Below, in pieces: positions 38,811 to 63,466 of a stretch of 64,000 nt of DNA (positions are counted from its first letter, which is position 1; every line of letters starts with the position of its first letter). The stretch is taken from positions 433,195-497,194 of the IMG/VR virus record IMGVR_UViG_3300017971_000185; one strand, given 5' to 3'. Position numbers and translations under genes: made by a program. A model generated the notes under the pieces. That model saw nothing but the letters and a program-made list of their open reading frames with translations, ran no database searches and was not told the origin of the DNA.

Positions 38811-39597
38811 CTCGACTGACGCACTTCGAAAATATCGTGAGGGATTGCGTGGAACGGCTAAGTATCGTGAGATGCGGGAGTATGATTGGGATCGGGTCCG
38901 GGCCGATCCTGCCAAGCATGCCAAGCGAAGTAAGACCAAACGAATCAAGCATGCTCGACGGATGGAGGAAGACTCTGACTACAAGACCAAGGTGTTGGCG
39001 GGAAGTAAGAGAGCCAACGCTCGTTTGAGAGAGCTTCCTGAGCATGAACGCTCTGCCAAACTCCACAAGTGGCGTTTGAAGAGCAGCTATGGTCTTACGC
39101 CTGAAGACTACGAGGAGCTTTTGGCTTCTCAGGGGAATGCCTGCGCGATCTGCCAGACCAAAGAGCCTGGCGGTAAGCGTAAGGTCTTTTCTGTAGACCA
39201 TTGCCATGAGTCGGGAAAAATCCGGGGGCTTTTGTGTGCTGGCTGTAATCTGGGGTTGGGTAAATTCAAGGATGATCCTGAGCTGCTTTGTTCAGCCATC
39301 GCCTATCTGAAAGCAGCAGAAGGAAAGCCGTCTCCTGAGGATATGCTTCATACAGTCACCTGTTCTGATTGTGGGAAGCGGTGGAAGACCAGGAGAGTCA
39401 GAGGATTGGTTTGTCCAGAGTGCGAGGAAAAGCGGGCTCAGGAACGAGAGCGGCGTTGGAGGTTGCGTAGAACCAAACAGTGTCCCACATGCGGTGGTGG
39501 GTTTGTGGATGAAACGCAGGCCAACAACCGTAAGTACTGTTCTTCTCTGTGCTTGGCCAAGGCACAGGCTGTGCGTCGGAAGGAGCGGGATGCGTAG
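38803..39597 (+). CDS. Endonuclease VII-family His-Me nuclease with zinc ribbons
   Basis: YGLTPEDYEELLASQGNACAIC..VDHCHESGKIRGLLCAGCN. Confidence 0.88.
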   Translation: MSSSTDALRKYREGLRGTAKYREMREYDWDRVRADPAKHAKRSKTKRIKHARRMEEDSDYKTKVLAGSKRANARLRELPEHERSAKLHKWRLKSSYGLTPEDYEELLASQGNACAICQTKEPGGKRKVFSVDHCHESGKIRGLLCAGCNLGLGKFKDDPELLCSAIAYLKAAEGKPSPEDMLHTVTCSDCGKRWKTRRVRGLVCPECEEKRAQERERRWRLRRTKQCPTCGGGFVDETQANNRKYCSSLCLAKAQAVRRKERDA

Positions 39598-40765
39598 CAA
39601 GAGGCCACCGCGAGAAGTCTTGGAGAGCTTGGTCGCGGAGCTTTTGACGCAACAGCAGATTGCTGGTCGTTATGGTGTGGCTCAGGTAACGGTGAGTCGC
39701 TGGCTGCGGCATTATGGGATTGAGGCGTTGGGTAAGACGGGGAAGATTGATCGGGAGCTGCCGCCTCTGACCGCGATTCAGCAGGCGCTCGTCGTGGGAT
39801 CTTTGTTGGGGGACGGGACGATGAGTGCTCCCAGCTTTCGCACGGCACGGATTGCGGAGGGGCATGCGCTCAAGCAGCGGGAGTACACGGATTGGAAGGC
39901 CGGCATCATGGGATCTTACGTGTCCAATCAGTATGAGGCTACCAAACGGAAGGACGGCAAGACGTACAAGGCGTGGTGGTATTCGTCTCGGACGACGACT
40001 CGGCTGCGTCCTTTTTACGATATGTTTTACGGCAGCGGGCACAAGGTGTTTCCGAAGCAGTTACCTGAGTTGATGACGCCTTTTGTGCTTGCCGTGTGGT
40101 ACATGGATGACGGGAGCCGGTGGGGGAGGTACTACCCACGCATCTCCTACGGCCTGGATGCTCAGGGTCTAGACCGAGCTTTGGAGGCTTTGGCGATGTT
40201 GGGTTTGTCTCCAAAGGTATACACGAGCAAGAAGGGGCGCACGCTTCATTTTCCGGGGCAAGATGATCTTTTCTTTAGCTTGGTCCGAGAGCATGTGCAT
40301 TCGTGTATGGTTTACAAGCTGCCTCTTGAGCGTGTCCGAAAACGTTATGTGTTTGTTGCGGAGAGGCAGGATCGGAGGCCCGAGTTTATTTCTGCCCTGA
40401 CGCCGGAGCGTTTGCGGAAGATGTACGAAGGCGACCTGATGACGGATGGGGAGATTGCTGTTTGTGTTGCCAAGCGCTTTGGTGTTTCTCCGTTTCGTGC
40501 GGAGACTGTGCGGAGAGTCCGAAAGAAGTGGGGTATTCCGGCCATGACGAGTCAGGAACGGAAAGAGAGGAGGCGTGGGACTGCTCCGCGATTGACTGGC
40601 TTGACACGGAAGGTTTTGGAACGTTTGTACGTCGAGGATTTGCTAAGCGACACGGAAATTGGGAGAATCTACGGCGTGAGCAAGACGCCGATTCGGGCAC
40701 GACGCAGGGCATACGGGATTTTGGCCATTTCCAAGGCAGAACGAGCCAGGTTGAGGTTGGGTTGA
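39590..40765 (+). CDS. LAGLIDADG homing endonuclease with HTH modules
   Basis: VVGSLLGDG and LAVWYMDDG; TQQQIAGRYGVAQVTV; AGGAG RBS before ATG 39590. Confidence 0.85.
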   Translation: MRSKRPPREVLESLVAELLTQQQIAGRYGVAQVTVSRWLRHYGIEALGKTGKIDRELPPLTAIQQALVVGSLLGDGTMSAPSFRTARIAEGHALKQREYTDWKAGIMGSYVSNQYEATKRKDGKTYKAWWYSSRTTTRLRPFYDMFYGSGHKVFPKQLPELMTPFVLAVWYMDDGSRWGRYYPRISYGLDAQGLDRALEALAMLGLSPKVYTSKKGRTLHFPGQDDLFFSLVREHVHSCMVYKLPLERVRKRYVFVAERQDRRPEFISALTPERLRKMYEGDLMTDGEIAVCVAKRFGVSPFRAETVRRVRKKWGIPAMTSQERKERRRGTAPRLTGLTRKVLERLYVEDLLSDTEIGRIYGVSKTPIRARRRAYGILAISKAERARLRLG

Positions 40766-40807
40766 ACGGCATGCTTCAAAAAATCGTGAGGGATTGCGTA
40801 TGAGGAA

Positions 40808-42055
40808 GTGATGAGCGACGGATCGTTCAAGCGGTTTCTCGGGATTTCCGTTCTGGAGGCAGCGCGTCAGCGTATCTCTTGGACATTTGATGTGTTTGAG
40901 AAGATCTGCGTTTCGTTTTCGGGCGGGAAGGATTCGGGGGTCATGTTGCATCTTGTCATGGACGAAGCCATCAAGCGGGGTCGGAAGGTTCATGTCATGT
41001 TCATCGACTGGGAGGCGCAATACGATCTCACGATCAGCTACGTGCGGGATTGTTTCAAGCTGTATGAGGAGCACATCATTCCCTATTGGGTGTGTCTCCC
41101 GTTGACGACCACGAATGCGGTCAGCGTATACGAGCCCGAGTGGGTTTGTTGGGACCCGGCCAAGAAGGATTTGTGGGTACGTCCGCTGCCTGAGGGTGTG
41201 ATATCAGATCCTCGCGGGTTTCCCTTCTACGAAGACAAGATGACATTCGAGGACTTTGTCCCAGAATTCGGCGAGTGGTTTGGCCAGGATGCCGGCTCCG
41301 CCGCGTGTCTGATTGGTCTTCGGTCTGGGGAGTCGTTGAATCGGTTTCGGACGTTGATTAGCGATCGGAAGGTGACCAAGGATGGGAGGCAGTGGACGAC
41401 CAAGGTAGGGCAGCCGGGGACGTTCAATGTCTACCCGATCTATGATTGGCAAACGAAAGACGTTTGGACATATTACGGGGCGTTTGAGAAGCCGTACAAT
41501 CGGTTGTATGATCGGTTTTACCAGGCTGGGTTGTCGCTGCACCAGATGCGGATTTGCGAGCCCTATGGAGATGAGCAGCGCCGGGGCTTATGGTTGTTTC
41601 ACGTGATCGAGCCACAGACGTGGAGCCGCATCATGGCCCGTGTTGCGGGGGCGAATTCCGGCGCCTTGTATGCTGGCGAGCGTGGAAACATCTTGGGAAA
41701 TCAGAAGGTCACGCTACCTGATGGTCATACGTGGAAATCGTTTACGATGATGTTGCTCGATACGATGCCGCAGGCGACGGCTGAGCATTACAGGAACAAG
41801 TTTGCGGTCTATCTCAAGTGGTACAAGGACCACGAGGGTTTGGACGACGTACCTGATTCCGTGCCTGGTGATACAGGGTCGCGGGATGTGGGGTCTTGGC
41901 GTCGGATGGCGCGTTGCATCTTGAAAAACGACTTCTGGGCAAGTAGTTTGAGTTTCGGTCCTCAGAGAAATTCGGCGTACAAGAAGTATCAAGATCTCAT
42001 GAAACGCAGGCGCAGAGAGTGGGGTATTTTTGCAGAGACGGTGACAGATGAGTAA
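40808..42055 (+). CDS. ibrA: PAPS-reductase-family (DUF3440, IbrA/YbdN-like) protein
   Basis: VSFSGGKDS PP-loop, IGLRSGESLNR, YPIYDW, QMRICEPYGDEQR. Confidence 0.82.
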   Translation: MMSDGSFKRFLGISVLEAARQRISWTFDVFEKICVSFSGGKDSGVMLHLVMDEAIKRGRKVHVMFIDWEAQYDLTISYVRDCFKLYEEHIIPYWVCLPLTTTNAVSVYEPEWVCWDPAKKDLWVRPLPEGVISDPRGFPFYEDKMTFEDFVPEFGEWFGQDAGSAACLIGLRSGESLNRFRTLISDRKVTKDGRQWTTKVGQPGTFNVYPIYDWQTKDVWTYYGAFEKPYNRLYDRFYQAGLSLHQMRICEPYGDEQRRGLWLFHVIEPQTWSRIMARVAGANSGALYAGERGNILGNQKVTLPDGHTWKSFTMMLLDTMPQATAEHYRNKFAVYLKWYKDHEGLDDVPDSVPGDTGSRDVGSWRRMARCILKNDFWASSLSFGPQRNSAYKKYQDLMKRRRREWGIFAETVTDE

Positions 42056-49471: not shown

Positions 49472-49500
49472 TTGACTCGGCGCAGGTCTCCAAGTATGGT
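49472..49500 (+). promoter_or_regulatory. Sigma70-type promoter of the cas operon
   Basis: TTGACT-N17-TATGGT; GGAG RBS at 49550-49553. Confidence 0.7.
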
Positions 49501-49563: not shown

Positions 49564-50532
49564 ATGAAAACACCAAGTCTCAAGAGACTCGATTGGATGG
49601 CTTTCTTCGAATCGGAGTTGGGCATCTGCAATGGAGACCCGGACAATCCGGGTTATCCGAGGATGACGGAGGACGGCTATCTGGTGATCAGCGGTCCTTT
49701 CCTGAATCGTCTGGGACGCAATCAGTACGAGCGCATGGTGGAGACGGGCGAGCTGCCCGCAAAGGGGAATGCGATCCACATTCAGCGTGGAGCCCGGCTT
49801 GCTAACGTTGCTGAGGAAGCCATTGCTGCGGCTGATCCCAAGGAAGCCGGGAAGATCTTGGAGGATGCCCGTAGTAAGCGCGACAAAGAGGCTGAGGAGG
49901 GGAAGAAAAAGACAAGAGCCCGGTCGAGTGTCAAGTATCCAGAGGAGAAGGTTCACGATGCGCTGACTCGCACGTTCATCGATGACGCGATGTACGGATC
50001 GGTCTTGACGAGCACAGTTTACACAGCCCCTTCCATTCACGGCGCCGTCACTACGCGTATGGGCATGTCTCTTCATCCTGTGGAGCTACACAACATGACC
50101 AACACGCGCATGGCGTCTGATAGTGATGCGGTGGACCGTTCTCGCGACTTCGCGCGCTCTAAACCGGTTCGCTACGCGCTCATTCGCACTGTGGGAACCT
50201 TTGATGCTTTTCGGGCTGAGAAGAACCATGTCGATGCTGAGCGTCTCAAGGATTTCTTTGCCGTCTATCTGACGATGTGCGACAACGCGACATCGAATGC
50301 GCGCGGAACCTTCGGCCTTCGGGAGTTGATTGTGGTCAAGCACAAGAGCCCCACAGGCAGCATGAGTCTGATCGATTTCAAGGATCGGCTCAAGGTGCGT
50401 ATGCGGAATGGGGAGTGCCCGCGCTCGTTTGCCGACATCGAGCTTGGCTATGATGACAAGAACCTCCCTCCGGGGGCTGAGATCATCCGACTGGCTGAGC
50501 TACGGGGGAACTTGGATTGGCTGGTTAGCTGA
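49564..50532 (+). CDS. cas7: Type I-C Cas7 (Csd2), divergent
   Basis: CNGDPDNPGYPRMTEDG, FIDDAMYGSV, GAVTTRMGMSLHPV..TNTR. Confidence 0.85.
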   Translation: MKTPSLKRLDWMAFFESELGICNGDPDNPGYPRMTEDGYLVISGPFLNRLGRNQYERMVETGELPAKGNAIHIQRGARLANVAEEAIAAADPKEAGKILEDARSKRDKEAEEGKKKTRARSSVKYPEEKVHDALTRTFIDDAMYGSVLTSTVYTAPSIHGAVTTRMGMSLHPVELHNMTNTRMASDSDAVDRSRDFARSKPVRYALIRTVGTFDAFRAEKNHVDAERLKDFFAVYLTMCDNATSNARGTFGLRELIVVKHKSPTGSMSLIDFKDRLKVRMRNGECPRSFADIELGYDDKNLPPGAEIIRLAELRGNLDWLVS

Positions 50533-51197
50533 TGCCAAGTGTTTACTTTCAGGGCGACTTCGCCCACTTTTCCAACCCGCTGCTGAAGGCCGAGGGGACT
50601 ACCTTTCCCGGCCCTCCGCCTTCGGCTCTCCGCGGAGCCATTGAAAACATCCTGTTCAAGATGGGCGTCTACGTGGATGTCCGCCGCATCACGTACCACC
50701 GGCCGATTCGGACGATGAACTTCAAGACGAACGGCCTCAAACATGCGGTAGGCATGTCGCAGATCACGCTCCCGGATGCCCATCAGATGAACAACACGTT
50801 GCTCTACGACGTGGCCTATACAGTGGACTTCGATCTGCGCTTGTGTTGGCGTGACCGAGAGACCCAAGAGATCGTTAAGTTCGATGAGAGGGTGCTGGAG
50901 AGCCAGGATCTTCGGAAGTACATGGCGATGTACGAGAAGTATATCCGCCTGGGTAAGTGTCAGCACCCGCCTTGGCTGGGGTCGAAATTCTGCGAAGCTC
51001 TGTTCAGGGCACCCCGGCCCGAGGACACGCCGATTCAGGAGTCGCGGGACTTGGGGATGATGACGCACGGCATCGAGTACCGTAAGGCGGGGAACATCAC
51101 CCATGTCTTTCATCCGGTGATGAGAGACGGGGTTGTAGAGGTGGACTCGTTCTTCGATGTTCTCAAGGCCCGCTACGGGTTGAGGGCGGGTCAATGA
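50532..51197 (+). CDS. cas5: Type I-C Cas5 (Cas5c/Cas5d)
   Basis: GDFAHFSNP..PPPSALRGAIENI, LLYDVAY, PPWLG, DLGMM, PVMRDGVVEV. Confidence 0.88.
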   Translation: MPSVYFQGDFAHFSNPLLKAEGTTFPGPPPSALRGAIENILFKMGVYVDVRRITYHRPIRTMNFKTNGLKHAVGMSQITLPDAHQMNNTLLYDVAYTVDFDLRLCWRDRETQEIVKFDERVLESQDLRKYMAMYEKYIRLGKCQHPPWLGSKFCEALFRAPRPEDTPIQESRDLGMMTHGIEYRKAGNITHVFHPVMRDGVVEVDSFFDVLKARYGLRAGQ

Positions 51198-52870
51198 TTC
51201 GTCTCGACACACTCGTTGCCTTGGGGCAACGGGAAAAACTCGGCTATCTGCTCGATGACCAGCGGCCCTATGGGGAAGTTGTGTTGGATGCGGAGGGCCA
51301 CATCATCACTGTTCGCAAATCCTCTGGGGCGGTTCCCGTCCCAGACTTGCCCAATCGCACCAACTCCGAGTTGCGCATTGGGATGTATGTCGAGAACGAG
51401 ATGTATCTCTTTGGGACGACTCCGAAGGAGTACAAGGACCCCACGAAGCCTAGGAAAGCGCTGGAGCACGCTGCTGAAGCCTATGCCAAGATCGCCAAGG
51501 AAGTGCGGATCAAAGCCACACAGGCGGTCGCGCGGTTCTACGACTTGTCTCTAAGGGGCAAGCACAAGGTGCCGAAGGGGTGGCGATTTCAGCGGTATGT
51601 GTTTGTCTATAAGGACCAATACCTGCCCAGCGTTCCGCAGCTTCGCCCTGTGATTGAGAAATTTGTAGATGCCATTCCTAGCGTGGACAGCATCGAAAGG
51701 CAGTGCTTGATTACGGGAGAGTGGGTGCGGTGTCAGACGACGCCCCACGCAAACACCAAAGGACTTAGCTCCAACTCCAGTGGAGCGTCCTTTGTGAGTT
51801 TCAATGGGACAAGTCAGTACCAGGGGCGTCCCGAGGATCGGTTCTTGACGGCTCCCATCGCCCCTGGTGTATCTCGACTCATGACTTCAGCGCTTTCGTG
51901 GTTGAGCCGGAATCGTAGAATCCAACTCACGCCCGATCTCAATGTCTTGGTCTGGACTGAGGAAGGCCACCCGCTAGAGGCTCTCGGGCCGAAGTTGTTT
52001 GCGCCAGAGAAGGAGTCCCGAGAACAGCGAACGAAACGCGAAGAGGAAGCCGTTGGTGACCTCTTCGCTCATCCTGAGTGGGATGAGAGCACGGAGGCCG
52101 CCTACCTCCTGACAACGACTGGGAATATGGGTCGCTTCGCGGTCCGTGAGTGGGAGGAAACGACTGTCGGCAGGCTCTCTGCCAATCTGAGGCGGTTCGT
52201 TCAGGACTTCACAGTCGAGATCACAGTTGGGGAAGAGGAAGTCCAAGCTCGTCACACGTCTCTCTCGCGGCTGTACGCAGCGTGGTCCGATAGGCAGGTG
52301 GTACACCGTGACATCCTTGCCCTAGCCAACATGGCGCTCAAAGGAATGCCGGTACCAGAGTGTGCGTGGCCCTCCGGTGCGCCAGAAACCATTATCCAGA
52401 AAGCCATCTTTCAAGCGTATAGGAAACGGAACATGGAGAATCCAGGAAATTTCACAGCGGACATCAGCGTAGACGGGCAGTCGAATGCTTACCGGATGGG
52501 ACGGGCTTGTGCCGTCATGGAGGACGCTCGGTACAGCGCGAACAGAGCCAACAGTCGGGGGGTGATCGCGCACAATGTGGTTGACAACCCGTCTGTTGGG
52601 TTTCACCGGGCGATGCAGTCCATCATCCACCATTTGCCCAAGCGCCCAGGCAATCAGTACGCTGAGAGTCTCAGCGTGTTCACCAGCGGGATCGAAATTC
52701 CTGATCGGTTTGCTGTTCGGGAGCAGAACGAGTTTTGGCTGGGGTATCTCTACGAGCAGGGCCGTCAAAGCTACTTGTATAGGCTGGGGCGCGATGCCAA
52801 GAGCGCCAAGAAGAGCGAGCAGGGCGCGGATGGCCAGGACGTAGACGCCAGGGCATTGCTTGATGATTGA
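51194..52870 (+). CDS. cas8c: Type I-C Cas8c (Csd1)
   Basis: CLITG..PH..KG..ASFVSFN, TSALSWL, VLVW, AYRMGR..FWLGY. Confidence 0.82.
   Translation: MIRLDTLVALGQREKLGYLLDDQRPYGEVVLDAEGHIITVRKSSGAVPVPDLPNRTNSELRIGMYVENEMYLFGTTPKEYKDPTKPRKALEHAAEAYAKIAKEVRIKATQAVARFYDLSLRGKHKVPKGWRFQRYVFVYKDQYLPSVPQLRPVIEKFVDAIPSVDSIERQCLITGEWVRCQTTPHANTKGLSSNSSGASFVSFNGTSQYQGRPEDRFLTAPIAPGVSRLMTSALSWLSRNRRIQLTPDLNVLVWTEEGHPLEALGPKLFAPEKESREQRTKREEEAVGDLFAHPEWDESTEAAYLLTTTGNMGRFAVREWEETTVGRLSANLRRFVQDFTVEITVGEEEVQARHTSLSRLYAAWSDRQVVHRDILALANMALKGMPVPECAWPSGAPETIIQKAIFQAYRKRNMENPGNFTADISVDGQSNAYRMGRACAVMEDARYSANRANSRGVIAHNVVDNPSVGFHRAMQSIIHHLPKRPGNQYAESLSVFTSGIEIPDRFAVREQNEFWLGYLYEQGRQSYLYRLGRDAKSAKKSEQGADGQDVDARALLDD
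52433..52870 (+). CDS. cas11: Putative Cas11c by internal translation of cas8c
   Basis: AGGA..CGGA RBS and in-frame ATG just before the SNAYRMGR segment, where type I-C Cas11 normally begins. Confidence 0.55.
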   Translation: MENPGNFTADISVDGQSNAYRMGRACAVMEDARYSANRANSRGVIAHNVVDNPSVGFHRAMQSIIHHLPKRPGNQYAESLSVFTSGIEIPDRFAVREQNEFWLGYLYEQGRQSYLYRLGRDAKSAKKSEQGADGQDVDARALLDD

Positions 52871-55070
52871 CGTGTGTCAATTCGTCACCGGCCTCTCCTC
52901 GGACAGAGGAGAGGCCGAATCTTCTGGCCCCGACTCTCTGTGGGAGCATCAGCAGTTTGGGTTCCTTGATGTAGTAGACCACATCCTGAATCGGAAGGAG
53001 AAGCAAGTTGGGCTGTCTGGCCAGCCAGGGTGTGGTAAGACGCGCCTTACGACGTATATTGCGGCTTACTTGGCCAAGTCTCCGGTGTCTCCTATCACTA
53101 GAGTAGTCGTTGTGGTCCCGACCCAGATCATTCGGGACCAGTACAGAGGACAGAAGTCTGTAGTCCGGTTTGGGGCTGTTGAGGACGTAGCTGGGGAGGG
53201 CCCGAACAACAAAGCTGTCATCTCGGTCCCTGACATTGACTTAGGGAAGCTGATAGACCCTATGGTGGCTGGTCCAAAATATCTCGTGGACCACGTCACA
53301 GGTGCCGGCAAGCCGAGAGTCATCCTTGCCACGACTATGGACACCTTTCGCAGAGCCCTAGATTGCATTGGCGACATGAGCCATGTGTTAGTCGTTCTCG
53401 ATGAGGCGCATCGGTTCCCTGTAGGAGAATTCAAAGCATGGGCAAAGGCCAGAGTCGCTTGTGAGGAGAAGAGTGCCACTATCCTTGCCACGACGGCTAC
53501 GATGTACCGAGCGGACGGGCTTCCGATTTGTCCTGGTGCGTACATACACCAAATTCCCCGGATCAAACTGATTGAGGCTGGCCTCTGCCCAAGTCGCTTT
53601 CCTGTAAAGGTTGTTCTCCTTCCCTCCGTCGCTAAGACAGCGACGGAGGTAGTGGATGTCCGTGTGAAAGGGGAAGGAACGGAAGGAACCCTTGTAGAGC
53701 TTCTGACCGATGACGATCTCCGTTTTGGGGTGCGGCATTGGGTTGGTCTGGGATGCCCGTTTGGCCTCATGCGATGCCAAACCCAGGCGTTGACCAAGCG
53801 CTTGAAAGAAATTGTCGAGGAGGAGTGTCCCCACCTGAAGGCTGAGGAGGTGGGGCGCCCCGTTGTGGATCTTTCGGGCAAAGAGGTAGACAAGATGTGG
53901 CCCGTTGTGGATCTTTCGGGTTCCAAGGTGAACAAGGCGTTGGAGGCCCAGATTGCGCATGATGGCCGTGTGCGGCATGCCAATGAGATACGGACACAGC
54001 TAGTTGTGGGCATTCGACGTGTTGAGTGTGGTTTCGACTGGCCTCCGGTATCTCATGTCTTCAACTTCGGGCTCATTTCGTCTGAGACCCTCCTGGCCCA
54101 GCTTCGAGGACGGGGTTGGCGTTCGAAGACGAGATACGAGGGCTACCCTGAGCGGTTTCGGGATGAGGCGTGGCTCATCATGTTTGTGCCGACTGTGTCA
54201 GAGGAAGCTCGAACGGAGTTTCTGAGGAGCCCTGATCATCTCAAGCTGTTGATGATCATCGCGGCGACCACGGTCAATGAAGAGGCAGGTACTCTGCTGT
54301 CGTTCATCCATGATGAGATCCAGAAGGGGTTGTCGCGGTATGTGCGTGGGTACCGGGACCAGTTGCAGGTCATCCGTATCCTGGGGGCCCTCAACCCTGA
54401 GCCCAGAGAGATGGACGAAATACGGGCTGATCTTGGAAAGATCGAGACTCGGCTCGGAGGCGATGTGTCCGTTTCGGACTACATCAGAGAGATTGTCTTA
54501 GAGTCGCGGGACGAGAAGAAGCGTGGGGTCGTGAAGAGAAAGTGGTCGAGACGACGGAAGCTCGGAGCCCTGATTCTTTTGTTGGGGCAGAAGGGTCAGT
54601 CCAAGAAAGAGACCGCGCGGCTGATTCGGGAGCTTCTGGACAAGAAGAAATCGGTTACGCTCGTGGAGAGTCCTGAGCAGGTTTCAGATGAGGTTCGCTC
54701 CGTGCTTGCAGATGCTCTCAATCAGTTGGTTGAGAAGCATGGCGACATTGTTACCTTCACGGACACATACGAGGAGATGGCGGCCACCATGAACACCGAT
54801 GTGGACACTATCCGTCGCATGCAGCGAGAGGTGGACCGTCTGACACAATTCAAGCCTCGCAGCTATCAGGTTGCTGTTGAGGCTGTTAGCCAAGAGTTGG
54901 TTCACTGCGGAAGGCGGTGGAAGGTTCTCCAGGACCTTTCCGGGCCTCTTGGCTTGGACCCAGGGACCTACACAATGCGTCATCTCGATCGCGATCTACG
55001 ACATCAGGTGTTGAAAGGCCAGCCAGAGGACATCAACAGTTTGAGAGACTTGAGGCATGCGTTTCGGTAA
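52860..55070 (+). CDS. SF2 (DEAH) helicase without HD nuclease domain
   Basis: LWEHQ, GQPGCGKT, LDEAH, TAT, VECGFDWP, QLRGRGWR; motif I starts ~50 aa from the N-terminus. Confidence 0.8.
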   Translation: MMIDVCQFVTGLSSDRGEAESSGPDSLWEHQQFGFLDVVDHILNRKEKQVGLSGQPGCGKTRLTTYIAAYLAKSPVSPITRVVVVVPTQIIRDQYRGQKSVVRFGAVEDVAGEGPNNKAVISVPDIDLGKLIDPMVAGPKYLVDHVTGAGKPRVILATTMDTFRRALDCIGDMSHVLVVLDEAHRFPVGEFKAWAKARVACEEKSATILATTATMYRADGLPICPGAYIHQIPRIKLIEAGLCPSRFPVKVVLLPSVAKTATEVVDVRVKGEGTEGTLVELLTDDDLRFGVRHWVGLGCPFGLMRCQTQALTKRLKEIVEEECPHLKAEEVGRPVVDLSGKEVDKMWPVVDLSGSKVNKALEAQIAHDGRVRHANEIRTQLVVGIRRVECGFDWPPVSHVFNFGLISSETLLAQLRGRGWRSKTRYEGYPERFRDEAWLIMFVPTVSEEARTEFLRSPDHLKLLMIIAATTVNEEAGTLLSFIHDEIQKGLSRYVRGYRDQLQVIRILGALNPEPREMDEIRADLGKIETRLGGDVSVSDYIREIVLESRDEKKRGVVKRKWSRRRKLGALILLLGQKGQSKKETARLIRELLDKKKSVTLVESPEQVSDEVRSVLADALNQLVEKHGDIVTFTDTYEEMAATMNTDVDTIRRMQREVDRLTQFKPRSYQVAVEAVSQELVHCGRRWKVLQDLSGPLGLDPGTYTMRHLDRDLRHQVLKGQPEDINSLRDLRHAFR

Positions 55071-55689
55071 GGCCAAGGAAGTTTCGCGGGAGAACAATCT
55101 CCTTCACGTGATGAACAGCTATTTGCTGTTCTCGGGCGGCAAGATGCGAGTCGATTGGCTGGAGGTGCCGGGCGAAGGCTCTCCGATGGTGAGAATCCTT
55201 CGATCCTATCTCGTACCGGGCGTGTCCAAGCTCGTTTGTTTGGATCGTAACGCCGAGTACGTCCGGGAGGGCGAGGAGCAATACGGGAGTGAGATCTGCG
55301 AGTGGGTTTTGGCCGATGACTTGTTTGCCGAGCTAGCTAATTCACCGGACAAGTACGCTAACGTAGGGGTTCTGAATGTCGATCTCTACAACAGCCTTCG
55401 TCTGCTCGAATTCCCCGAACAGATGCGGATCGTCATGGAGTTTGCCACACGCCAGTTCTGGGCGATCGGGGCCTTCATGGTGTTTCTGAACTACTCGATG
55501 CGAGGCAGTGTTCGCGAGGAGTTTGCTCAAGACGTGATCAAGACTCTGGAGCCTTATCTAGATTTGTCACAGGTTGATCTCACTGATGAGGGCTACCTGT
55601 ACAAAGGAGGAACGCCTGACCAACCAGGCAACCGGAGATTGAATCTTCGGATACACCTAGGACCAACAAGGACACCGAACAATGAGTAA
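55057..55689 (+). CDS. Putative class I SAM-dependent methyltransferase-like protein
   Basis: Rossmann-like order WLEVPGEGS (motif I), LVCLDRN (acidic end of beta2), VLNVDLY, VFLNYS. Confidence 0.45.
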   Translation: MRFGKAKEVSRENNLLHVMNSYLLFSGGKMRVDWLEVPGEGSPMVRILRSYLVPGVSKLVCLDRNAEYVREGEEQYGSEICEWVLADDLFAELANSPDKYANVGVLNVDLYNSLRLLEFPEQMRIVMEFATRQFWAIGAFMVFLNYSMRGSVREEFAQDVIKTLEPYLDLSQVDLTDEGYLYKGGTPDQPGNRRLNLRIHLGPTRTPNNE

Positions 55690-56020
55690 GAAGAACGATG
55701 ATCTGGAGGCGGTTCGTGTGATCGCTGATGCGCTTGAACCGTTTGATGATGTCGTCAGGGAGCGTATTCTGAAATGGGCATGTGAGCGGGTCGGGATGCA
55801 CCCCAAGGAGATCAAGATCATACATGAGACACAAACTGCCTATTCGGAAGACGGTGGGGGTGGGAAGAGCCCCGCCGAGAAGGCAGCCAGGACCAGGAAG
55901 GCCAATGCTGAGAAGCGCTCTGAGGCCGCCAGGAAAGCGAACAAGACCAGGGGGAAGAAGGGGCGATCCGAGGCCGCAAAGAAGGCAGCGGCTACGCGTC
56001 GTGCTTGTCAGGCTGCCTAG
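55682..56020 (+). CDS. Small protein with basic histone-H1-like AxKAxxTR repeats
   Basis: AEKAARTRK, EAARKANKTRG, EAAKKAAATRR. Confidence 0.65.
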   Translation: MSKKNDDLEAVRVIADALEPFDDVVRERILKWACERVGMHPKEIKIIHETQTAYSEDGGGGKSPAEKAARTRKANAEKRSEAARKANKTRGKKGRSEAAKKAAATRRACQAA

Positions 56021-56229: not shown

Positions 56230-56558
56230 GTTTCCGCCCTGTTACGGGGCGGTTGCGATTACAAGGAAGAGCCGCTGGACCTGAGCGCAGCCACCAAGCT
56301 GTTTCCGCCCTGTTACGGGGCGGTTGCGATTACAAGAGCCGTGAACGAGCAGGAATGCGCCCAAATCCTGGCCGAGTTTCCGCCCTGTTACGGGGCGGTT
56401 GCGATTACAAGGCCATGAGCTTGGCGCTCATTGATTCGAGGGCCGCTGCGTTTCCGCCCTGTTACGGGGCGGTTGCGATTACAAGATCGAGATTCTGCGG
56501 TGGACACGCGCCAGCATGTTGAGTTTCCGCCCTGTTACGGGGCGGTTGCGATTACAAG
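56230..56558 (+). CRISPR. Block A: 5 identical 36-nt repeats
   Basis: GTTTCCGCCCTGTTACGGGGCGGTTGCGATTACAAG at 56230, 56301, 56376, 56450, 56523; spacers 35, 39, 38, 37 nt. Confidence 0.97.
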
Positions 56559-56592
56559 GATTGCACGGCCTACGAGGGGTTTCCGCTCTCTC

Positions 56593-56836
56593 TTCCGTCT
56601 CCGGCCTCGAATCGAGGAGGCGGTTTCGATTGCAACGCACGCGGATGCGAAACTCCGTCTTCTCCAAGTCTGTCTCCGCGGGAGGCGGTTTCGATTGCAA
56701 CATGTCGTGCGTCGAGACATCCAGAGTGGGTTCCGTCTCCGCGGGGAGGCGTTTCGATTGCAACACCAACGGCGGTCAGGGAGTTGGAGCATGGGATTGC
56801 GTTCCGTCTCCGCGGGGAGACGGTTTCGATTGCAGT
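56593..56836 (+). CRISPR. Block B1: 4 variant repeats
   Basis: Consensus GTTCCGTCTCCGCGGGGAG(G/A)CGGTTTCGATTGCAAC at about 56593, 56668, 56730, 56801. Confidence 0.85.
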
Positions 56837-56863
56837 ATGTTGGTGGTGGAATCCTCGCCGAGT

Positions 56864-56893
56864 AGAGCCCCCTCAAACGAGGGGGCTCTTTTT
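56864..56893 (+). terminator. Intrinsic terminator inside the array
   Basis: AGAGCCCCCTC-AAAC-GAGGGGGCTCT (11-bp stem) followed by TTTT. Confidence 0.85.
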
Positions 56894-56939
56894 CCCAGTC
56901 TTCGATTACAACTACGCCATTCGGCCCCAAGGCGATCTC

Positions 56940-57345
56940 GTTTCCGCCCTCCTGCGGAGCGGTTGCGATTACAACGCTCTCACCGGCCTCAGTGTTCTCT
57001 ACTCCTTCTGGTTTCCGCTCCTCTGCGGAGCGGTTGCGATTACAACTACCGGACCGACAGCTACACCAATCTGATCAGAAAATCGAGCACCGTCGCATCG
57101 GACAGTGGTTTCCGCTCCTCTGCGGAGCGGTTGCGATTACAACTAATCGGTTTCCACCGCCGAGGGAGAACCCCGCACGTTTCCGCCCTCCTGCGGGGCG
57201 GTTGCGGTTACAACGTGACGGTCACAGGTCGAATTTCGTCTGCCCGGTCCGCCCTCCTGCGGGGCGGTTGCGATTACAACGCTACCGAGAGATCGCGGAA
57301 CGGTTGGGTGTTTCCGCCCTCCTGCGGGGCGGTTGCGATTACAAC
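56940..57345 (+). CRISPR. Block C: 6 repeats
   Basis: GTTTCCGC(C/T)C..TGCGG(G/A)GCGGTTGCGATTACAAC at 56940, 57011, 57108, 57179, 57247, 57310. Confidence 0.93.
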
Positions 57346-57376
57346 CTGCACGCTCAGCCGCCCACGAGGGTACGAG

Positions 57377-57841
57377 GTTCGTCTCCGAGGGAGACGGTTT
57401 CGATTGCAACCAGATGTGGGATGCAGTGTCCGTGTCCGCCTCTCACGGAGGCGGTTTCGATTGCAATTTCGTTGGCTCTCACTGATCGGTTTTTCGTGTT
57501 CCGTCTCCGAGGAGGCGGTTTCGATTGCAACCCCACTGACCTCAGCGCCATACGACGGTTCCGTTCCGTCTCCGAGGAGACGGTTTCGATTGCAACCTCC
57601 ACCCACGTCGTGTAGGTGCCGCCCCGTAGAGGGGCGGTTTCGATTATAACACGCGGGACTCGGGAAGAAGTTGAACCCGGATCGTTGGGTCCGCCCTTTT
57701 GGGCGGTTTCGATTACAACAATCAAGGTGGTACGTCATTTCGGGAGAGGGAGCGATTGCGATTACAACCGCATGATGTCCTGGATGGGCTTGATCGTTGA
57801 GGTTTCCGCTCTCTGCGCTACGGAGGGCGGTTGCGATCAAC
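57377..57841 (+). CRISPR. Block B2 plus hybrid/degenerate repeats
   Basis: B-type at 57377, 57434, 57498, 57563; hybrids at 57616, 57689; degenerate at about 57746 and 57802. Confidence 0.85.
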
Positions 57842-60103: not shown

Positions 60104-61216
60104 GTGACCAAGGAAAGCAAATTCAAGCAACGCGTGCGTGATCGTATGGAGAGGACGGGCGAATCCTACGCTACTGCTCGACGCAACGAGAATGAGGCTG
60201 CGGGTTTGATCGAGGAGATGAAGGCAGTGGATGCTGAGCTTAGTGAGCTAGAGAAAGCTCAGCTAGAGCGCGAGAAGGTCAATCGTCAGTGGGTGAAGGA
60301 CAACCCAGGGCTCAAGGTTGTGACGCTGACGTTGACGCATAACGAGCACGGGACGCCGACGATTCACGTGTCGGGTCCTGAGCTTACGTCCATCCAGATC
60401 ACCCAGCCGCCTGACGTATACGTGGAAGCCATCCGACAGGCGTACCAGGACAACGAGTGGGCGAAGAACCCGAAGGACGATCTTGGTGATCTTCCCGAGT
60501 GTCGTTTGGAGGACTCCAAGCGCAAAGAGGACTTTGTCTACGAAAGCGGACCCGCGCCCGAGGGCACGATTCATGAGGACTTTGATGCGTTGGTGGCGGC
60601 GCTGTACAAGGTGAAGGGCCGTGTCATGTCTGTGGATCATCCGAACCATGGGCTTGTCGGGTTTGTGGAAACCGAGACGGACAAGTACCACTGGATACGG
60701 ATCAAGCCGACTCTTGCCTGGACTGAAACGGTCGCTTGGGAACATCTAGAGCTTTGGGGCCTGATGCAGACGCCGCGAGGGCGTTGCAAGGCCGCGGGTC
60801 TTTTCAGCCAGGAAGAGATGCTGGCGAAGGTGTCGTCGGCTCTAGAGGGCTGGTGGAAGAGTGCCTCTCCGTTTCCGACCAATCCTGATCCTGCGGAGAT
60901 CGTTGCTCCGCTTTCTGGAGAAGCGTTGGCTGATGTGTTTGCTCACGTCGAGAAATTCGATGTTTCGGTTGAGGCGATTGTGATGTCGGCGCGCAGTTTC
61001 CATGAGGTTTGTAAGCACGCAAGCGACAGCATCCGCTTGGAAACTCGTGCCCGGCTGATGAAGAAAGGGCTAATGGGTCGCCTGTGGGATGCTCTCGTGA
61101 TCACGACCCGAGAGATCGATGAGGATGAGATATGTTTCTTGGGTCGGGATCCCGAGGGGAAGTGGGTGTGTCACTCGCTTCGTGTGATTCGGCCATCTGC
61201 GCAGGGTTCAGAGTGA
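60104..61216 (+). CDS. Protein with C-terminal partial MCP paralog
   Basis: N-terminal KFKQRVRDRMERTGESYATARR; 60902-61111 is 28/70 identical, ungapped, to MCP 37323-37532. Confidence 0.8.
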   Translation: MTKESKFKQRVRDRMERTGESYATARRNENEAAGLIEEMKAVDAELSELEKAQLEREKVNRQWVKDNPGLKVVTLTLTHNEHGTPTIHVSGPELTSIQITQPPDVYVEAIRQAYQDNEWAKNPKDDLGDLPECRLEDSKRKEDFVYESGPAPEGTIHEDFDALVAALYKVKGRVMSVDHPNHGLVGFVETETDKYHWIRIKPTLAWTETVAWEHLELWGLMQTPRGRCKAAGLFSQEEMLAKVSSALEGWWKSASPFPTNPDPAEIVAPLSGEALADVFAHVEKFDVSVEAIVMSARSFHEVCKHASDSIRLETRARLMKKGLMGRLWDALVITTREIDEDEICFLGRDPEGKWVCHSLRVIRPSAQGSE

Positions 61217-63466
61217 CCTTCCGTGTTTTCGGAAGGCGATCCCGAGATTCCTTGCCCTGAGCTTGTCGTCTGCCCAGCACAGCCTGCATTCGCTACACGT
61301 CAACCCGGACAAGGTCTGCGCCGGGCAAGGGGCCAGCGACCAACCCGTCCCAGGTACCTGGAATACCTGACCGTCGGGAGATAGAGCAGGCACAATGACG
61401 GCAGGCGCGTACCCCATTGACACGACCCTCTTGATGTCTTCCACCGTGTCACAGGAGCCAAGGACGCTCGCCCGCCGAAACGCGGCGCGTGGGATCCACG
61501 CTGCCGAGTGAGTGTACGTCCACAGAGCCGTTCCCCTGTTCGCCAACCACCAGTCCGCGAGCCCAGCAACCATTTTTGCCTGACCGACCGTCGTCACGTC
61601 TCCACCACCATCGTGTAGACATAAGGCGAGCCCTTGGGGATCGGGAAATTTCTCCTTCGCAAGTTTGGCCTCAGCCGCGATAATTTCGTCGGCCGTCCAG
61701 TTTCCGTCTTTCGCTATTCGCTCAAGCCGCTTTGAGTTGCAAGGGTGTGCGTAGCATCCGTTGTCGCGCAGGGGGCAACTTGGCGGGCATGTTTGTTTGA
61801 TGGGAATCGAGGTTGAGATGATTTGAGAGATCGGCTTGGAGCCTCGGATCGGTGCATGTATTGCGACGGGTGGTTGGCGCGTTTTTGAAGAGATCCCGTG
61901 TTTGCGGAGATGGCAGATCACAGTTGATGGGGACACTTCCAGAGCTTGAGCGATGGTTTGATTGGTTGCTCCCTCTGCTACCATCTGTCGAAGAACATCC
62001 GCATCGAGGGGCTTGGGTTTCGGCCGCTCGATCCCATGTTTGCGGAGATGGTACGCCACAGTTGATGGGGACACTTCCAGAGCCCGAGCGATGGTCCGAT
62101 TGGTTGCTCCCTCTGCCACCATTTGTCGAAGAACATCCGCATCGAGCTTTCGAGCGGTGGTTTGGTTGGGTTTCTCTGCCACAACCTTCCGCTCGATCCC
62201 GTGTTTGCGGAGATGGTACGCCACAGTTGATGGGGACACTTTCAGAGCCCGCGCGATGGCCTGATCGGTTGCTCCCTCTGCTACCATCTGTTGAAGAACG
62301 TCCGCATCGAGAGTTTTCTGTTTCGGCCGCTCGATCCCGTGTTTGCGGAGATGGTACGCCACAGTTGATGGGGACACTTTCAGAGCCCGCGCGATGGCCT
62401 GATCGGTTGCTCCCTCCATCGTCATTTGTCGAAGAACATCCGCATCGAGGGGCTTGGGTTTTGGCCGCTTGATCCCGTGCTTGTGGAGATGGTACGCCAC
62501 AGTCGAGATAGACACTTTCAGAGCCCGAGCGATGGTCCGATTGGTTGCTCCCTCCATCACCATTTGTCGAAGAACATTCGCTTCTATGGTGGTTTTGCAG
62601 CGCTGCGATGGTGGAGGGGCGGCCTTCCAAAGCTCCTGTTGCCATTCGGAGAAACTGTCGAAATCGCGTCCGTTAGTGTAAGCCCATCGTTTGAGGAGAC
62701 GGCTGCGTTTGGGTTCGGGCGTCTTGCACCAAGCGATGTAATTCAGCAGCCATCGAAAGTTGGTCAGGGTTTTCGGAATCTCTGCGGGAAACCTTCGTGG
62801 GAAGATTTGTCGGAGGATTCTCTGAAGAGTCTCTTGTTTCCAGGCTCTAGTCTCGATCTGGAAAGGCGCGTACCACCCTGCCTTTTTTCCAGCAGACATC
62901 CAGGCTTGGATTTGAGCCTTGGTCTGGTCGGCCGATGCGTATTCTCTGCGGTACGATTTAGAGAAAAAATGCTTTCCGTCCGGCAGGCTTTCCAGCAAGC
63001 GTTTCTGTTTCGGTTCGATTTTTCCGAGAACGTATCGCCTGCGCCATGTTTCTAGCCACCATTTCCACTTTTTCTGGGAGCGTAGTTCCCAAAGAGATTG
63101 AGACTTTGTTAGGTGCTTGAGTCGGGTGATCCTGTCAAGCCATCGGGCGTGTGGGTATTTGCCGTCATTGTGGACTCGGTTGTTCCAGGTCCACCCGTCT
63201 AAGCTCTCAAGCAGCCGTATGCGATCTTGTGTTAGCTCTCCGTTGCGGTACATTCGGCGCTGATAAGCTATCCATTTCCCTATTGGTCGTCCGTCTCTTC
63301 GATCCGTGTAGCGGATTTGGTCGGCGCCACCACGTTCTTCCGATTCGGCAAGCACTTCGTAGTACGTCCCCATCCACTGGGCTGTCGAAAACGGTTGTGA
63401 TCGCTTCCGCCATCTTCGAAGGTCCCTCATCCAGTCTTTTTCGACGCACTGATCTCGGCTTGGCAT
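61208..63466 (-). CDS. Fusion: helicase-associated (HA)-like repeats + 5 HTH repeats + Cys-rich gp88-like domain
   Basis: IGKWIAYQRRMY..RIRLLESLDGWTW; 5x LDADVLRQM..HLRKHGI; TCPPSCPL..GCYA, LHDGGGD, WTYTH, CPAQT..CSECRLC. Confidence 0.75.
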   Translation of the reverse strand: MPSRDQCVEKDWMRDLRRWRKRSQPFSTAQWMGTYYEVLAESEERGGADQIRYTDRRDGRPIGKWIAYQRRMYRNGELTQDRIRLLESLDGWTWNNRVHNDGKYPHARWLDRITRLKHLTKSQSLWELRSQKKWKWWLETWRRRYVLGKIEPKQKRLLESLPDGKHFFSKSYRREYASADQTKAQIQAWMSAGKKAGWYAPFQIETRAWKQETLQRILRQIFPRRFPAEIPKTLTNFRWLLNYIAWCKTPEPKRSRLLKRWAYTNGRDFDSFSEWQQELWKAAPPPSQRCKTTIEANVLRQMVMEGATNRTIARALKVSISTVAYHLHKHGIKRPKPKPLDADVLRQMTMEGATDQAIARALKVSPSTVAYHLRKHGIERPKQKTLDADVLQQMVAEGATDQAIARALKVSPSTVAYHLRKHGIERKVVAEKPNQTTARKLDADVLRQMVAEGATNRTIARALEVSPSTVAYHLRKHGIERPKPKPLDADVLRQMVAEGATNQTIAQALEVSPSTVICHLRKHGISSKTRQPPVAIHAPIRGSKPISQIISTSIPIKQTCPPSCPLRDNGCYAHPCNSKRLERIAKDGNWTADEIIAAEAKLAKEKFPDPQGLALCLHDGGGDVTTVGQAKMVAGLADWWLANRGTALWTYTHSAAWIPRAAFRRASVLGSCDTVEDIKRVVSMGYAPAVIVPALSPDGQVFQVPGTGWSLAPCPAQTLSGLTCSECRLCWADDKLRARNLGIAFRKHGRSL
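61884..62587 (-). repeat. Five tandem HTH-coding repeats (period 138 nt, one 165 nt)
   Basis: Near-identical units, e.g. CATCCGCATCGAG recurring at about 61997, 62135, 62299, 62437. Confidence 0.92.

What the first reader, a model, noticed from the sequence alone, without database searches (positions are those of the whole stretch)
52860..55070. Helicase in the Cas3 slot looks unrelated to Cas3
Seen: Q-like motif LWEHQ at residue ~27 leaves no room for an HD domain. Motifs GQPGCGKT/DEAH/TAT/QLRGRGWR are intact, followed by ~300 aa of helical C-terminus with no nuclease motif I can recognise. Inference: a Res/UvsW-like SF2 helicase recruited analogously to DinG in type IV-A.
Basis: partly seen in the sequence, partly recalled or inferred. 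Interest (0 to 1): 0.75.

Follow-up and report, generated by a model that had tools for sequence, protein, structure and literature searches.

The report
Phage Cascade with non-Cas3 helicase pair
A 497-kb phage carries a type I-C CRISPR complex in which the usual Cas3 shredder is replaced by an unrelated motor protein and a small methyltransferase-shaped partner; the missing Cas3 was noted in 2020, the partner apparently was not, and how the system works is untested.

Summary
ORF 52860-55070 encodes a 736-aa SF2 helicase with intact Q, Walker A, DEAH, TAT and motif VI. Only 26 residues precede the Q motif, so no HD domain fits. It lies in an overlapping operon, cas7-cas5c-cas8c-helicase, followed by a CRISPR region, in a huge phage that has no Cas3, Cas1 or Cas2.

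It is not Cas3. A profile comparison with genuine I-C Cas3 aligns only RecA1 (191 columns, E 5e-9). A family of phage helicases outside CRISPR loci aligns end to end (656 columns, E 1e-94), C-terminal domain included.

- It was present in 9 of 10 related CRISPR loci whose downstream DNA could be read, and beside 2 of 3 non-CRISPR relatives.
- Its model has a class I SAM-methyltransferase fold.
- It is predicted to bind the helicase (ipSAE 0.85, controls 0.00).

So a Cas3-less Cascade captured an older phage helicase-plus-partner module. The CRISPR-linked helicases group together in a quick tree (16-row group, support 81).

The headline is already published for huge phages (Al-Shayeb 2020). No nuclease was found. 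The most likely mechanism is nuclease-free, ATP-driven action at Cascade-bound targets, as with type IV-A DinG. This is inferred, not shown.

The parts
49472..49500 (+). promoter-like site (TTGACT-17-TATGGT) 64 nt upstream of cas7
   Evidence: Consensus scan. It is not more than chance in number; only its position is suggestive.
49564..50532 (+). cas7 (Csd2-like), 322 aa
   Evidence: Pfam Cas_Cas7 7.4e-37. NCBIfam Csd2 scores 102 bits, below the 182-bit cut-off. PADLOC Cas7b/Cas7c (best hit the I-B/I-C model Cas7b).
50532..51197 (+). cas5c (Cas5d-like), 221 aa
   Evidence: Pfam Cas_Cas5d 6.5e-11. PADLOC Cas5c 3e-30.
51194..52870 (+). cas8c (Csd1), 558 aa
   Evidence: Pfam Cas_Csd1 1.4e-42. PADLOC Cas8c 9e-39.
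52860..55070 (+). SF2 ResIII-type helicase, 736 aa (likely start ATG 52863). Approximate layout: RecA1 aa 23-250, RecA2 aa 283-445, helical C-terminal domain aa 447-735. It overlaps the cas8c stop and the start of the partner gene.
   Evidence: for the ORF, domains and motifs. Family and operon context. hhalign results.
55057..55689 (+). 210-aa partner with a class I SAM-methyltransferase (Rossmann) fold. Conserved residues: G39 (motif I), D63 (D or E in all nine, end of strand 2), N107 and D109 (end of strand 4), N145.
   Evidence: Conservation. Model pLDDT 82.6. Fold matches. Predicted complex with the helicase, ipSAE 0.85 against 0.00 for controls.
55682..56020 (+). 112-aa ORF with a basic 'AAKKAxxTRxAN' repeat tail; it recurs beside the operon in other loci
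   Evidence: No family hit.
56230..57719 (+). CRISPR region: 21 repeat units comprising 16 distinct repeat sequences. Each has a 6-8 bp GC hairpin followed by a conserved tail TT[G/T]CGATT[A/G]CAAC. A terminator-like hairpin at 56869-56885 splits the region.

Best explanation
This is a Cas3-less, adaptation-less type I-C variant CRISPR system of a huge phage. Shown by computation: Cas7, Cas5c and Cas8c are encoded in one overlapping operon with an SF2 ResIII-type helicase and a 210-aa methyltransferase-fold protein. The helicase is unrelated to Cas3 beyond the shared SF2 core. The helicase belongs, over its full length, to a family of phage helicases found outside CRISPR loci. Some of those are followed by the same partner gene, so a Cascade captured a ready-made two-gene module. 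Its ATPase motifs are invariant across relatives only 20-35% identical. The model predicts that the helicase and the partner form a heterodimer through the helicase N-terminal helix and a beta-hairpin insert in RecA1 (aa 102-123). Inferred: Cas5c cuts the hairpin repeats to make crRNAs, and Cascade forms an R-loop on a competing phage, plasmid or host target. The helicase-partner pair is then loaded there and uses ATP to translocate. It would interfere without a nuclease of its own, by blocking or stripping polymerases or remodelling the target, as proposed for CasDinG in type IV-A. Whether the partner is an active methyltransferase, a SAM sensor or only an adaptor is open.
For: Operon and motifs. 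No Cas3 core, Cas3 HD, Cas1 or Cas2 in the 497-kb genome, estimated 94% complete. The same cas7-cas5-cas8c-helicase order (as far as each contig reaches) appears in 10 further diverged loci; the partner follows in 9 of them. In the tenth (L029) it is absent. hhalign of helicase family A2 against I-C Cas3: 191 columns, E 4.9e-9. Against non-CRISPR phage helicases: 656 columns, E 1.3e-94. The partner also follows the helicase in non-CRISPR phage loci L021 and L022 (hhalign probability 99.8, E 1.3e-30). Partner fold: Foldseek PDB YtqB/MnmM 1.5e-6, AFDB 'class I SAM-dependent MTase' 2e-10 with TM 0.73, Atlas RlmJ-like TM 0.68. Complex: ipSAE 0.84-0.85 in three runs against 0.00 in three controls. 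Invariant residues across the family: D180, E181 and H183 (DEAH), A212 and T213 (motif III), Q413, G416, R417 and R420 (motif VI) (P0001 numbering, one lower than the ORF numbering). All 16 repeat variants keep a hairpin. Structural neighbours are mostly dsDNA translocases and repair helicases: RadD, CSB, Mfd, Rad54, HsdR, LlaBIII. The literature treats this variant as probably non-nucleolytic.
Against: No experiment exists for any member. Recruitment to Cascade was not modelled. No protospacer was found, so the targets are unknown. The C-terminal domain could not be folded and searched alone, so a novel nuclease fold is not strictly excluded. The helicase model is of middling confidence (pLDDT 68.9). 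The partner matches no methyltransferase sequence family even at E<=5. One CRISPR-linked subclade (L029) lacks the partner gene next to the helicase. The complex prediction used my own shallow alignments, which weakens its calibration.
Confidence: 0.55

Rival explanations
1. RNA-guided modification. The partner is an active SAM-dependent methyltransferase. Cascade supplies target recognition, in place of a specificity domain, and the motor spreads or positions methylation of target DNA or RNA. This would be a restriction-modification-like Res/Mod pair retargeted by crRNA.
For: The partner has a confident class I methyltransferase fold. It keeps a motif I glycine, a D/E at the end of strand 2 and an invariant Asp at the end of strand 4. 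It is too small (210 aa) to carry its own target-recognition domain. The top Foldseek hit for the helicase is the Type ISP enzyme LlaBIII, which combines a motor with a methylase.
Against: There is no sequence-level match to any methyltransferase family. Motif I is reduced to a single invariant Gly, and the strand-4 motif is N-x-D rather than a known catalytic motif. N107 is lost in the non-CRISPR relative L021. SAM binding was not tested. The benefit to a phage is unclear.
Confidence: 0.15
2. Nuclease in trans. The helicase-partner pair, or Cascade itself, recruits a host or phage nuclease (for example the host's Cas3 or another enzyme), so that targets are still degraded.
For: Al-Shayeb 2020 notes that many phage systems lack interference genes. 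The conserved helical C-terminal domain has no assigned role and could be a docking surface. The related cellular Cascades found here all have a neighbouring Cas3.
Against: No nuclease gene is conserved in or next to the operon across 11 loci. The Cas proteins are only 24-26% identical to the nearest cellular ones found, which makes use of a host Cas3 unlikely. The same C-terminal domain exists in non-CRISPR relatives.
Confidence: 0.15
3. The helicase is a highly diverged Cas3' (helicase-only Cas3) that lost its HD domain.
For: It sits next to the Cascade genes. Some relatives give weak PADLOC or TIGR cas3_core hits over RecA1 (E 5e-6 to 4e-5). hhalign probability is 96 for RecA1.
Against: Those hits cover RecA1 only and are no better than hits to PbeA or DinG. 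There is no Cas3 C-terminal domain, although Pfam finds it in all three control Cas3 proteins. The full-length relatives are non-CRISPR phage helicases (E 1e-94). No Cas3 appears among the top 50 structural matches.
Confidence: 0.03
4. Chance neighbours: a phage replication helicase and its partner merely sit beside a degenerate Cascade remnant and take no part in CRISPR function.
For: The pair comes from phage replication or nucleotide-metabolism neighbourhoods. The arrays show no spacer turnover between assemblies.
Against: The order and the overlapping start and stop codons are conserved in 11 loci whose proteins are only 20-35% identical. The CRISPR-linked helicases fall in one group of the tree. 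The genome has no second copy of the pair. All cas genes and repeat hairpins are intact.
Confidence: 0.02

Closest known systems
[quoted passage not shown] 2020, PMC7162821; named so in bioRxiv 10.1101/2023.06.23.546257)
   Same: A phage-borne Cas7, Cas5d-like and Cas8c set with no Cas1, Cas2 or Cas6 and 'a helicase protein instead of Cas3'. The gene content here is the same.
   Different: This genome has only one CRISPR region, so it shows no sign of the second (Cas12j) system described for the two published phages. It comes from other samples. I found no published mention of the methyltransferase-fold partner, its predicted binding to the helicase, or the pair's origin outside CRISPR loci. 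The paper's supplements could not be read.
Type IV-A CRISPR-Cas with CasDinG
   Same: A Cascade-like complex on a mobile element, with no adaptation module and a helicase without a nuclease as the accessory effector. It is the best working model for a nuclease-free mechanism.
Canonical type I-C Cas3 (HD nuclease plus SF2 helicase plus C-terminal domain)
   Same: It occupies the same functional slot beside Cas5, Cas8c and Cas7, and both have an SF2 DExH core.
   Different: There is no HD domain and no Cas3 C-terminal domain, and only RecA1 aligns. The gene order is cas7-cas5-cas8c-helicase, not cas3-cas5-cas8c-cas7 as in L013 or cas5-cas8c-cas7-cas3 as in L015 and L018.
Motor and methylase pairs of ATP-dependent restriction enzymes (Type III Res/Mod, Type I HsdR/HsdM, Type ISP LlaBIII)
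   Same: A ResIII-family motor (Pfam PF04851) is paired with a methyltransferase-fold protein. LlaBIII and HsdR are the top Foldseek hits for the helicase.

Membership tests
Cas3 / Cas3' (type I signature protein) | HD nuclease domain, fused or encoded separately as Cas3'' | tested here: not met
   Only 26 residues precede the Q motif. No HD or Cas3_HD hit in the protein. PF18019 has no match in the whole 497-kb genome. Control Cas3 proteins from L013, L015 and L018 do hit Cas3_HD.
Cas3 / Cas3' (type I signature protein) | Cas3 helicase core profile (TIGR01587, cut-off 102 bits) and Cas3 C-terminal domain (PF22590) | tested here: not met
   No hit for the window protein in NCBIfam or PADLOC and none in the genome. 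Relatives reach at most 24 bits, over RecA1 only. PF22590 is found in all three control Cas3 proteins and in no family member.
Cas3 / Cas3' (type I signature protein) | Full-length profile similarity to Cas3 | tested here: not met
   hhalign A2 against A6 aligns 191 of 723 columns (RecA1), E 4.9e-9. The non-CRISPR phage helicases align over 656 columns, E 1.3e-94. The Cas3 alignment has only 3 sequences.
CasDinG (type IV-A) | XPD/Rad3-type helicase matching the Csf4/DinG profiles | tested here: not met
   No PADLOC DinG hit for the window protein. Relatives give P-loop-only hits at E>=3e-5. The PDB profile hit to DinG covers profile positions 14-61 only.
ResIII-type SF2 helicases (Pfam PF04851) | Profile hit above the gathering cut-off, with intact motifs Q, I, II, III and VI | tested here: met
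   41.4 bits against a 22.5-bit cut-off. Motifs located. D180, E181, H183, A212, T213, Q413, G416, R417 and R420 are invariant in the family (P0001 numbering).
Type III restriction Res subunit | C-terminal PD-(D/E)xK endonuclease domain | tested here: not met
   The C-terminus is modelled as helical. D691 is its only invariant acidic residue. No nuclease family or fold was hit. The domain was not folded on its own.
Unnamed phage helicase plus ~210-aa partner module (alignment A7; loci L021, L022) | End-to-end helicase similarity, including the C-terminal domain, with the partner gene immediately downstream | tested here: met
   hhalign probability 100, E 1.3e-94, 656 columns. Partner homology: probability 99.8, E 1.3e-30. 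Gene contexts.
Type I-C CRISPR-Cas | Cas7 (Csd2), Cas5c and Cas8c (Csd1) next to a CRISPR array | tested here: met
   The Pfam hits are all above their cut-offs. NCBIfam scores are below the curated cut-offs, so the proteins are divergent. The array is shown.
Type I-C CRISPR-Cas | Cas3, and the adaptation genes Cas1, Cas2 and Cas4 | tested here: not met
   No Cas3, Cas1 or Cas2 in the genome. There is only a sub-threshold Cas4-like hit, 9 kb upstream of the window.
Class I SAM-dependent methyltransferases (the partner, 55057-55689) | Seven-stranded Rossmann-like fold | tested here: met
   Model pLDDT 82.6, pTM 0.83. More than 500 methyltransferase matches in the PDB at E<=1e-3. AFDB TM 0.73. 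Atlas TM 0.59-0.74. This rests on a predicted structure only.
Class I SAM-dependent methyltransferases (the partner, 55057-55689) | SAM-binding motifs and sequence-family membership | tested here: inconclusive
   G39 is invariant, D63 is D or E in all nine sequences, and D109 is invariant. No Pfam family hits at E<=5, and the PDB profile search gives nothing significant.
Class I SAM-dependent methyltransferases (the partner, 55057-55689) | Methyl transfer to a defined substrate | not testable with these tools
   This needs biochemistry.

The most novel reading that the evidence does not exclude
The helicase and its methyltransferase-fold partner form a crRNA-directed motor-modifier. Cascade would replace the specificity subunit of a restriction-modification-like Res/Mod pair, so that the phage writes methyl marks on chosen DNA, or otherwise acts on it enzymatically through SAM, rather than cutting it.
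Probability: 0.15. Interest if true: 0.85.

Novelty: new member of a known kind. Interest (0 to 1): 0.5.

Why it matters
The headline is not new. A helicase standing in for Cas3 in a phage type I-C variant was reported in 2020, but nobody has shown how it works. This analysis adds three points that make the system testable:
- The effector is probably a two-protein unit: a motor plus a methyltransferase-fold partner.
- That unit existed in phages before it was joined to Cascade.
- The arrangement has been kept across a deep clade (at least 11 representatives of 50%-identity clusters) with its ATPase motifs intact.

If interference is nuclease-free, this would be a second, independent case, beside type IV-A DinG, of a Cascade coupled to a bare motor. 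That matters for how mobile elements fight each other. It could also give compact programmable tools for repression or modification without DNA breaks.

Tried and rejected
1. The word-indexed homologue search found only the protein itself. The exhaustive HMMER search was needed to find relatives.
2. tblastn and megablast against GenBank phages gave no match.
3. phmmer against PDB sequences gave nothing. The profile search gave only generic SF2 hits.
4. C-terminal domain: the ESM Atlas feature search of aa 445-735 gave only sub-noise leads, such as EcoEI_R_C, EcoR124_C and DUF8090. In the whole-model searches, no listed match points to the C-terminal domain.
5. Spacer targets: none in the phage's own genome. 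Spacers 1-3 were not found in IMG/VR, and spacer 4 was not found in the metagenome contigs, except in the phage's own arrays. The other 17 spacers were not searched in the public collections.
6. The supplements of Al-Shayeb 2020 could not be read. I therefore cannot say which genomes they described or whether their locus figure shows the partner gene.
7. The 700-aa ORF beside the L012 array was tested as a possible Cas12j. It has no PADLOC or PDB match, so the question is left open.
8. No RNA run was listed for this phage, so expression is unknown.
9. The IQ-TREE mixture run did not finish. The tree cited is a FastTree with several long branches.
10. Rejected explanations: Cas3', chance adjacency and decay (see the rival explanations).
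Full report
WHERE THE WINDOW LIES. The window is the last 64 kb of a 497,194-bp virus record, estimated 94% complete. It encodes a large terminase (11417-13588) and a portal protein (14281-17748), so it is a huge phage. The same phage, at 100% identity, occurs in two IMG/VR contigs and in a 498,753-bp metagenome contig. Its DNA is present in 11 listed sediment and seawater runs from 2018 and 2021. No RNA run was listed.

THE OBSERVATION. ORF 52860-55070 (+) is real. An upstream stop closes the frame, so only 26 residues precede the Q motif and an HD domain cannot fit. Pfam gives ResIII (1.8e-10) and DEAD (1e-7) above their cut-offs, and Helicase_C just below. NCBIfam and PADLOC, which hold many Cas3 and DinG models, give no such hit.

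The gene overlaps the stop of cas8c. Upstream lie cas7 (49564-50532), cas5c (50532-51197) and cas8c (51194-52870), each clearly recognised. A CRISPR region follows at 56230-57719. The genome has no cas3 core, Cas3 HD, Cas1 or Cas2 and only this one CRISPR region.

RELATIVES AND CONTEXT. The word-indexed search found only the protein itself. The exhaustive search found 221 proteins at E<=1e-3, of which about ten align over the full length at 20-35% identity. I read the context of ten such relatives (counting P0024). In all of them the helicase follows the Cascade genes, in the order cas7-cas5-cas8c-helicase wherever the contig reaches far enough, usually with overlapping stop and start codons. 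CRISPR arrays lie downstream in four of the six related loci I scanned for repeats. The residues D180, E181, H183, A212, T213, Q413, G416, R417 and R420 are invariant (P0001 numbering, one lower than the ORF numbering used for the motifs), and GKT is kept in all eight full-length sequences. The motor is therefore under selection.

NOT CAS3.
- I fetched three genuine I-C-type Cas3 proteins from cellular loci that encode the nearest Cas7 relatives: Nocardiopsis (L013) and two cyanobacteria (L015, L018). Pfam finds Cas3_HD and the Cas3 C-terminal domain in each.
- The profile comparison of the phage helicase family with these proteins aligns RecA1 only: 191 columns, E 4.9e-9.
- The comparison with its twelve nearest sequence neighbours aligns 656 columns, E 1.3e-94, C-terminal domain included.
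- Weak cas3_core hits in some relatives also cover RecA1 only, and are matched by equally weak PbeA and DinG hits.

THE C-TERMINUS. The model (pLDDT 68.9) shows aa 447-735 as helices with one small hairpin. The region's only invariant or near-invariant residues are P443, R487, G532, D691 and P721. That is too few acidic or histidine residues for a metal-dependent nuclease. No nuclease family or fold was hit. The same domain is present in the non-CRISPR relatives, so it did not evolve for CRISPR work. One limit remains: the domain was not folded and searched on its own.

THE MISSED PARTNER. The next ORF, 55057-55689 (210 aa), overlaps the helicase stop by 14 nt.
- Homologues follow the helicase in 9 of the 10 CRISPR-linked loci read. 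L029 lacks one.
- No sequence library recognises it.
- Its model is confident (pLDDT 82.6, pTM 0.83) and has a class I SAM-methyltransferase fold.
- Fold matches: PDB YtqB/MnmM, fibrillarin and KsgA at 1e-6 to 1e-5; an AFDB 'class I SAM-dependent methyltransferase' at 2e-10, TM 0.73; viral methyltransferases; Atlas RlmJ-like and RsmD-like clusters, and unnamed phage clusters at TM 0.68-0.74.
- Conserved positions fit the SAM-binding layout only in part: G39 after strand 1, D or E at position 63 ending strand 2, and N107 and D109 ending strand 4.
- A complex prediction with the helicase gave ipSAE 0.84-0.85 in three runs against 0.00 in three controls. In the tool's calibration, that mark was reached by 58 of 80 solved complexes and 2 of 110 mismatched pairs. 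The counts hold only roughly here, because my own alignments were used.
- The interface involves helicase aa 25-43, 72-75, 102-123, 227 and 498-505.

ORIGIN. The nearest non-CRISPR helicases are phage genes. L021 is a 114-kb contig with DnaB, DNA methylases, thymidine kinase and ligase. L023 and L024 have baseplate genes nearby. In L021 and L022 the helicase is again followed by a ~210-aa ORF homologous to the partner (hhalign probability 99.8, E 1.3e-30). In a FastTree of 70 helicases, all 11 representatives with a verified CRISPR context lie in one 16-row group (support 81, three subclades at 95-100). This group is separate from the three with a verified non-CRISPR context. The tree is quick and has long branches. 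It is consistent with a single capture but does not prove one. The phage has no second copy of the pair.

MECHANISM. Gene content, conservation, folds and the predicted heterodimer come from computation. The rest is inferred:
1. Cas5c processes the hairpin repeats. All 16 repeat variants keep a 6-8 bp hairpin just before a fixed 13-nt tail.
2. Cascade binds a target.
3. The motor-partner pair is loaded and translocates using ATP.
4. The pair interferes without a nuclease of its own.

[quoted passage not shown] The rivals are an active RNA-guided methyltransferase, a nuclease recruited in trans, a diverged Cas3', and chance adjacency. The targets are unknown. There is no self-match in the genome, and the four spacers searched against public collections found nothing. 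The arrays are identical in every assembly of this phage, as expected without Cas1 and Cas2.

COMPARISON AND NOVELTY. Al-Shayeb et al. [quoted passage not shown] The 2025 CRISPR classification update does not mention the variant, and neither does the 2023 rare-systems survey.

This phage appears to be a further member of the same kind. It has a single CRISPR region, so it shows no sign of the second, Cas12j system of the published pair. I could not read the paper's supplements to compare genomes. I found no published mention of the methyltransferase-fold partner, its predicted binding to the helicase, or the pair's history outside CRISPR loci. These are the useful additions.

SCORES. Novelty: new member of a known kind. 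Interest: 0.5. The system is real, conserved and mechanistically open, but its defining oddity has been in print since 2020.

Noticed in passing
window 56230-57719; also L005:6400-9800 and L029:5680-7140: The CRISPR region has 21 repeat units but 16 different repeat sequences. The hairpin stems differ by compensatory changes, while a 13-nt 3' tail (TT[G/T]CGATT[A/G]CAAC) stays fixed. Every variant still folds (-10.6 to -19.7 kcal/mol, against -7.4 on average for random 36-mers). Related loci L005 and L029 show the same style with their own fixed tails. L012 instead has a regular array of about 60 repeats.
   Followed up: partly
window 55682-56020 (+); L003:4534-4791, L008:10441-10623, L005:8718-8972: A small ORF with a lysine- and arginine-rich tail built of 'AAKKAxxTRxAN' repeats recurs just after the operon in several related loci. 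It matches no family, and it may be a sixth conserved component.
   Followed up: partly
window 61208-63466 (-), tandem DNA repeats 61886-62602: A 752-aa protein has an N-terminal HA (helicase-associated) domain, at least five HTH units and a C-terminal DUF7227. The HTH units are encoded by 138-nt tandem repeats and resemble Cbp1, the 'CRISPR DNA repeat-binding protein', though below that model's threshold (3.4e-22). The gene lies 3.5 kb beyond the array.
   Followed up: partly
window 53859-53936: There is a 42-nt direct repeat inside the helicase gene. It duplicates a 12-aa motif (PVVDLSGKEVDK / PVVDLSGSKVNK, 14 codons apart) in a loop modelled with pLDDT below 50, within the RecA2 domain.
   Followed up: no
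L001, L002, L027 against window 56230-57719: Where each contig reaches, the spacers are identical in the other assemblies of this phage (all 21 in L002, the first 6-8 in L001 and L027). There is therefore no sign of spacer turnover, which fits the absence of Cas1 and Cas2.
   Followed up: yes
L029:1-7200: In one CRISPR-linked subclade (P0024), cas8c is split into two ORFs, the helicase is shorter (673 aa) and no partner ORF follows. The array starts directly after the helicase. A TROVE/Ro60-like gene lies downstream.
   Followed up: partly
L012:12850-20720: This related locus has an array of about 60 repeats. It is followed by a 700-aa ORF with no PADLOC or PDB match, and then by an AcrVA2-like ORF. 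The 700-aa ORF could be a second effector, but that was not established.
   Followed up: partly
window 39371-42055 and 17787-22319: There is a LAGLIDADG/HNH homing-endonuclease-like ORF (39371-40765) and a PAPS-reductase-like ORF (40808-42055, phrog_2302 1e-90). A 1510-aa ORF carries a tRNA nucleotidyltransferase domain (17787-22319).
   Followed up: no
G000:C1:423843-424181 (about 9 kb upstream of the window): This is a sub-threshold Cas4-like (PD-(D/E)xK) match: 19.4 bits against a 22.7-bit cut-off, inside a 316-aa open frame. It is the only hint of an adaptation-type gene in the genome.
   Followed up: no
P0001 against window 52863-55067: The database representative P0001, used as first row of alignment A2 and for the structure model, differs from the window's own protein at 3 of 735 residues (99.6% identity).
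   Followed up: yes
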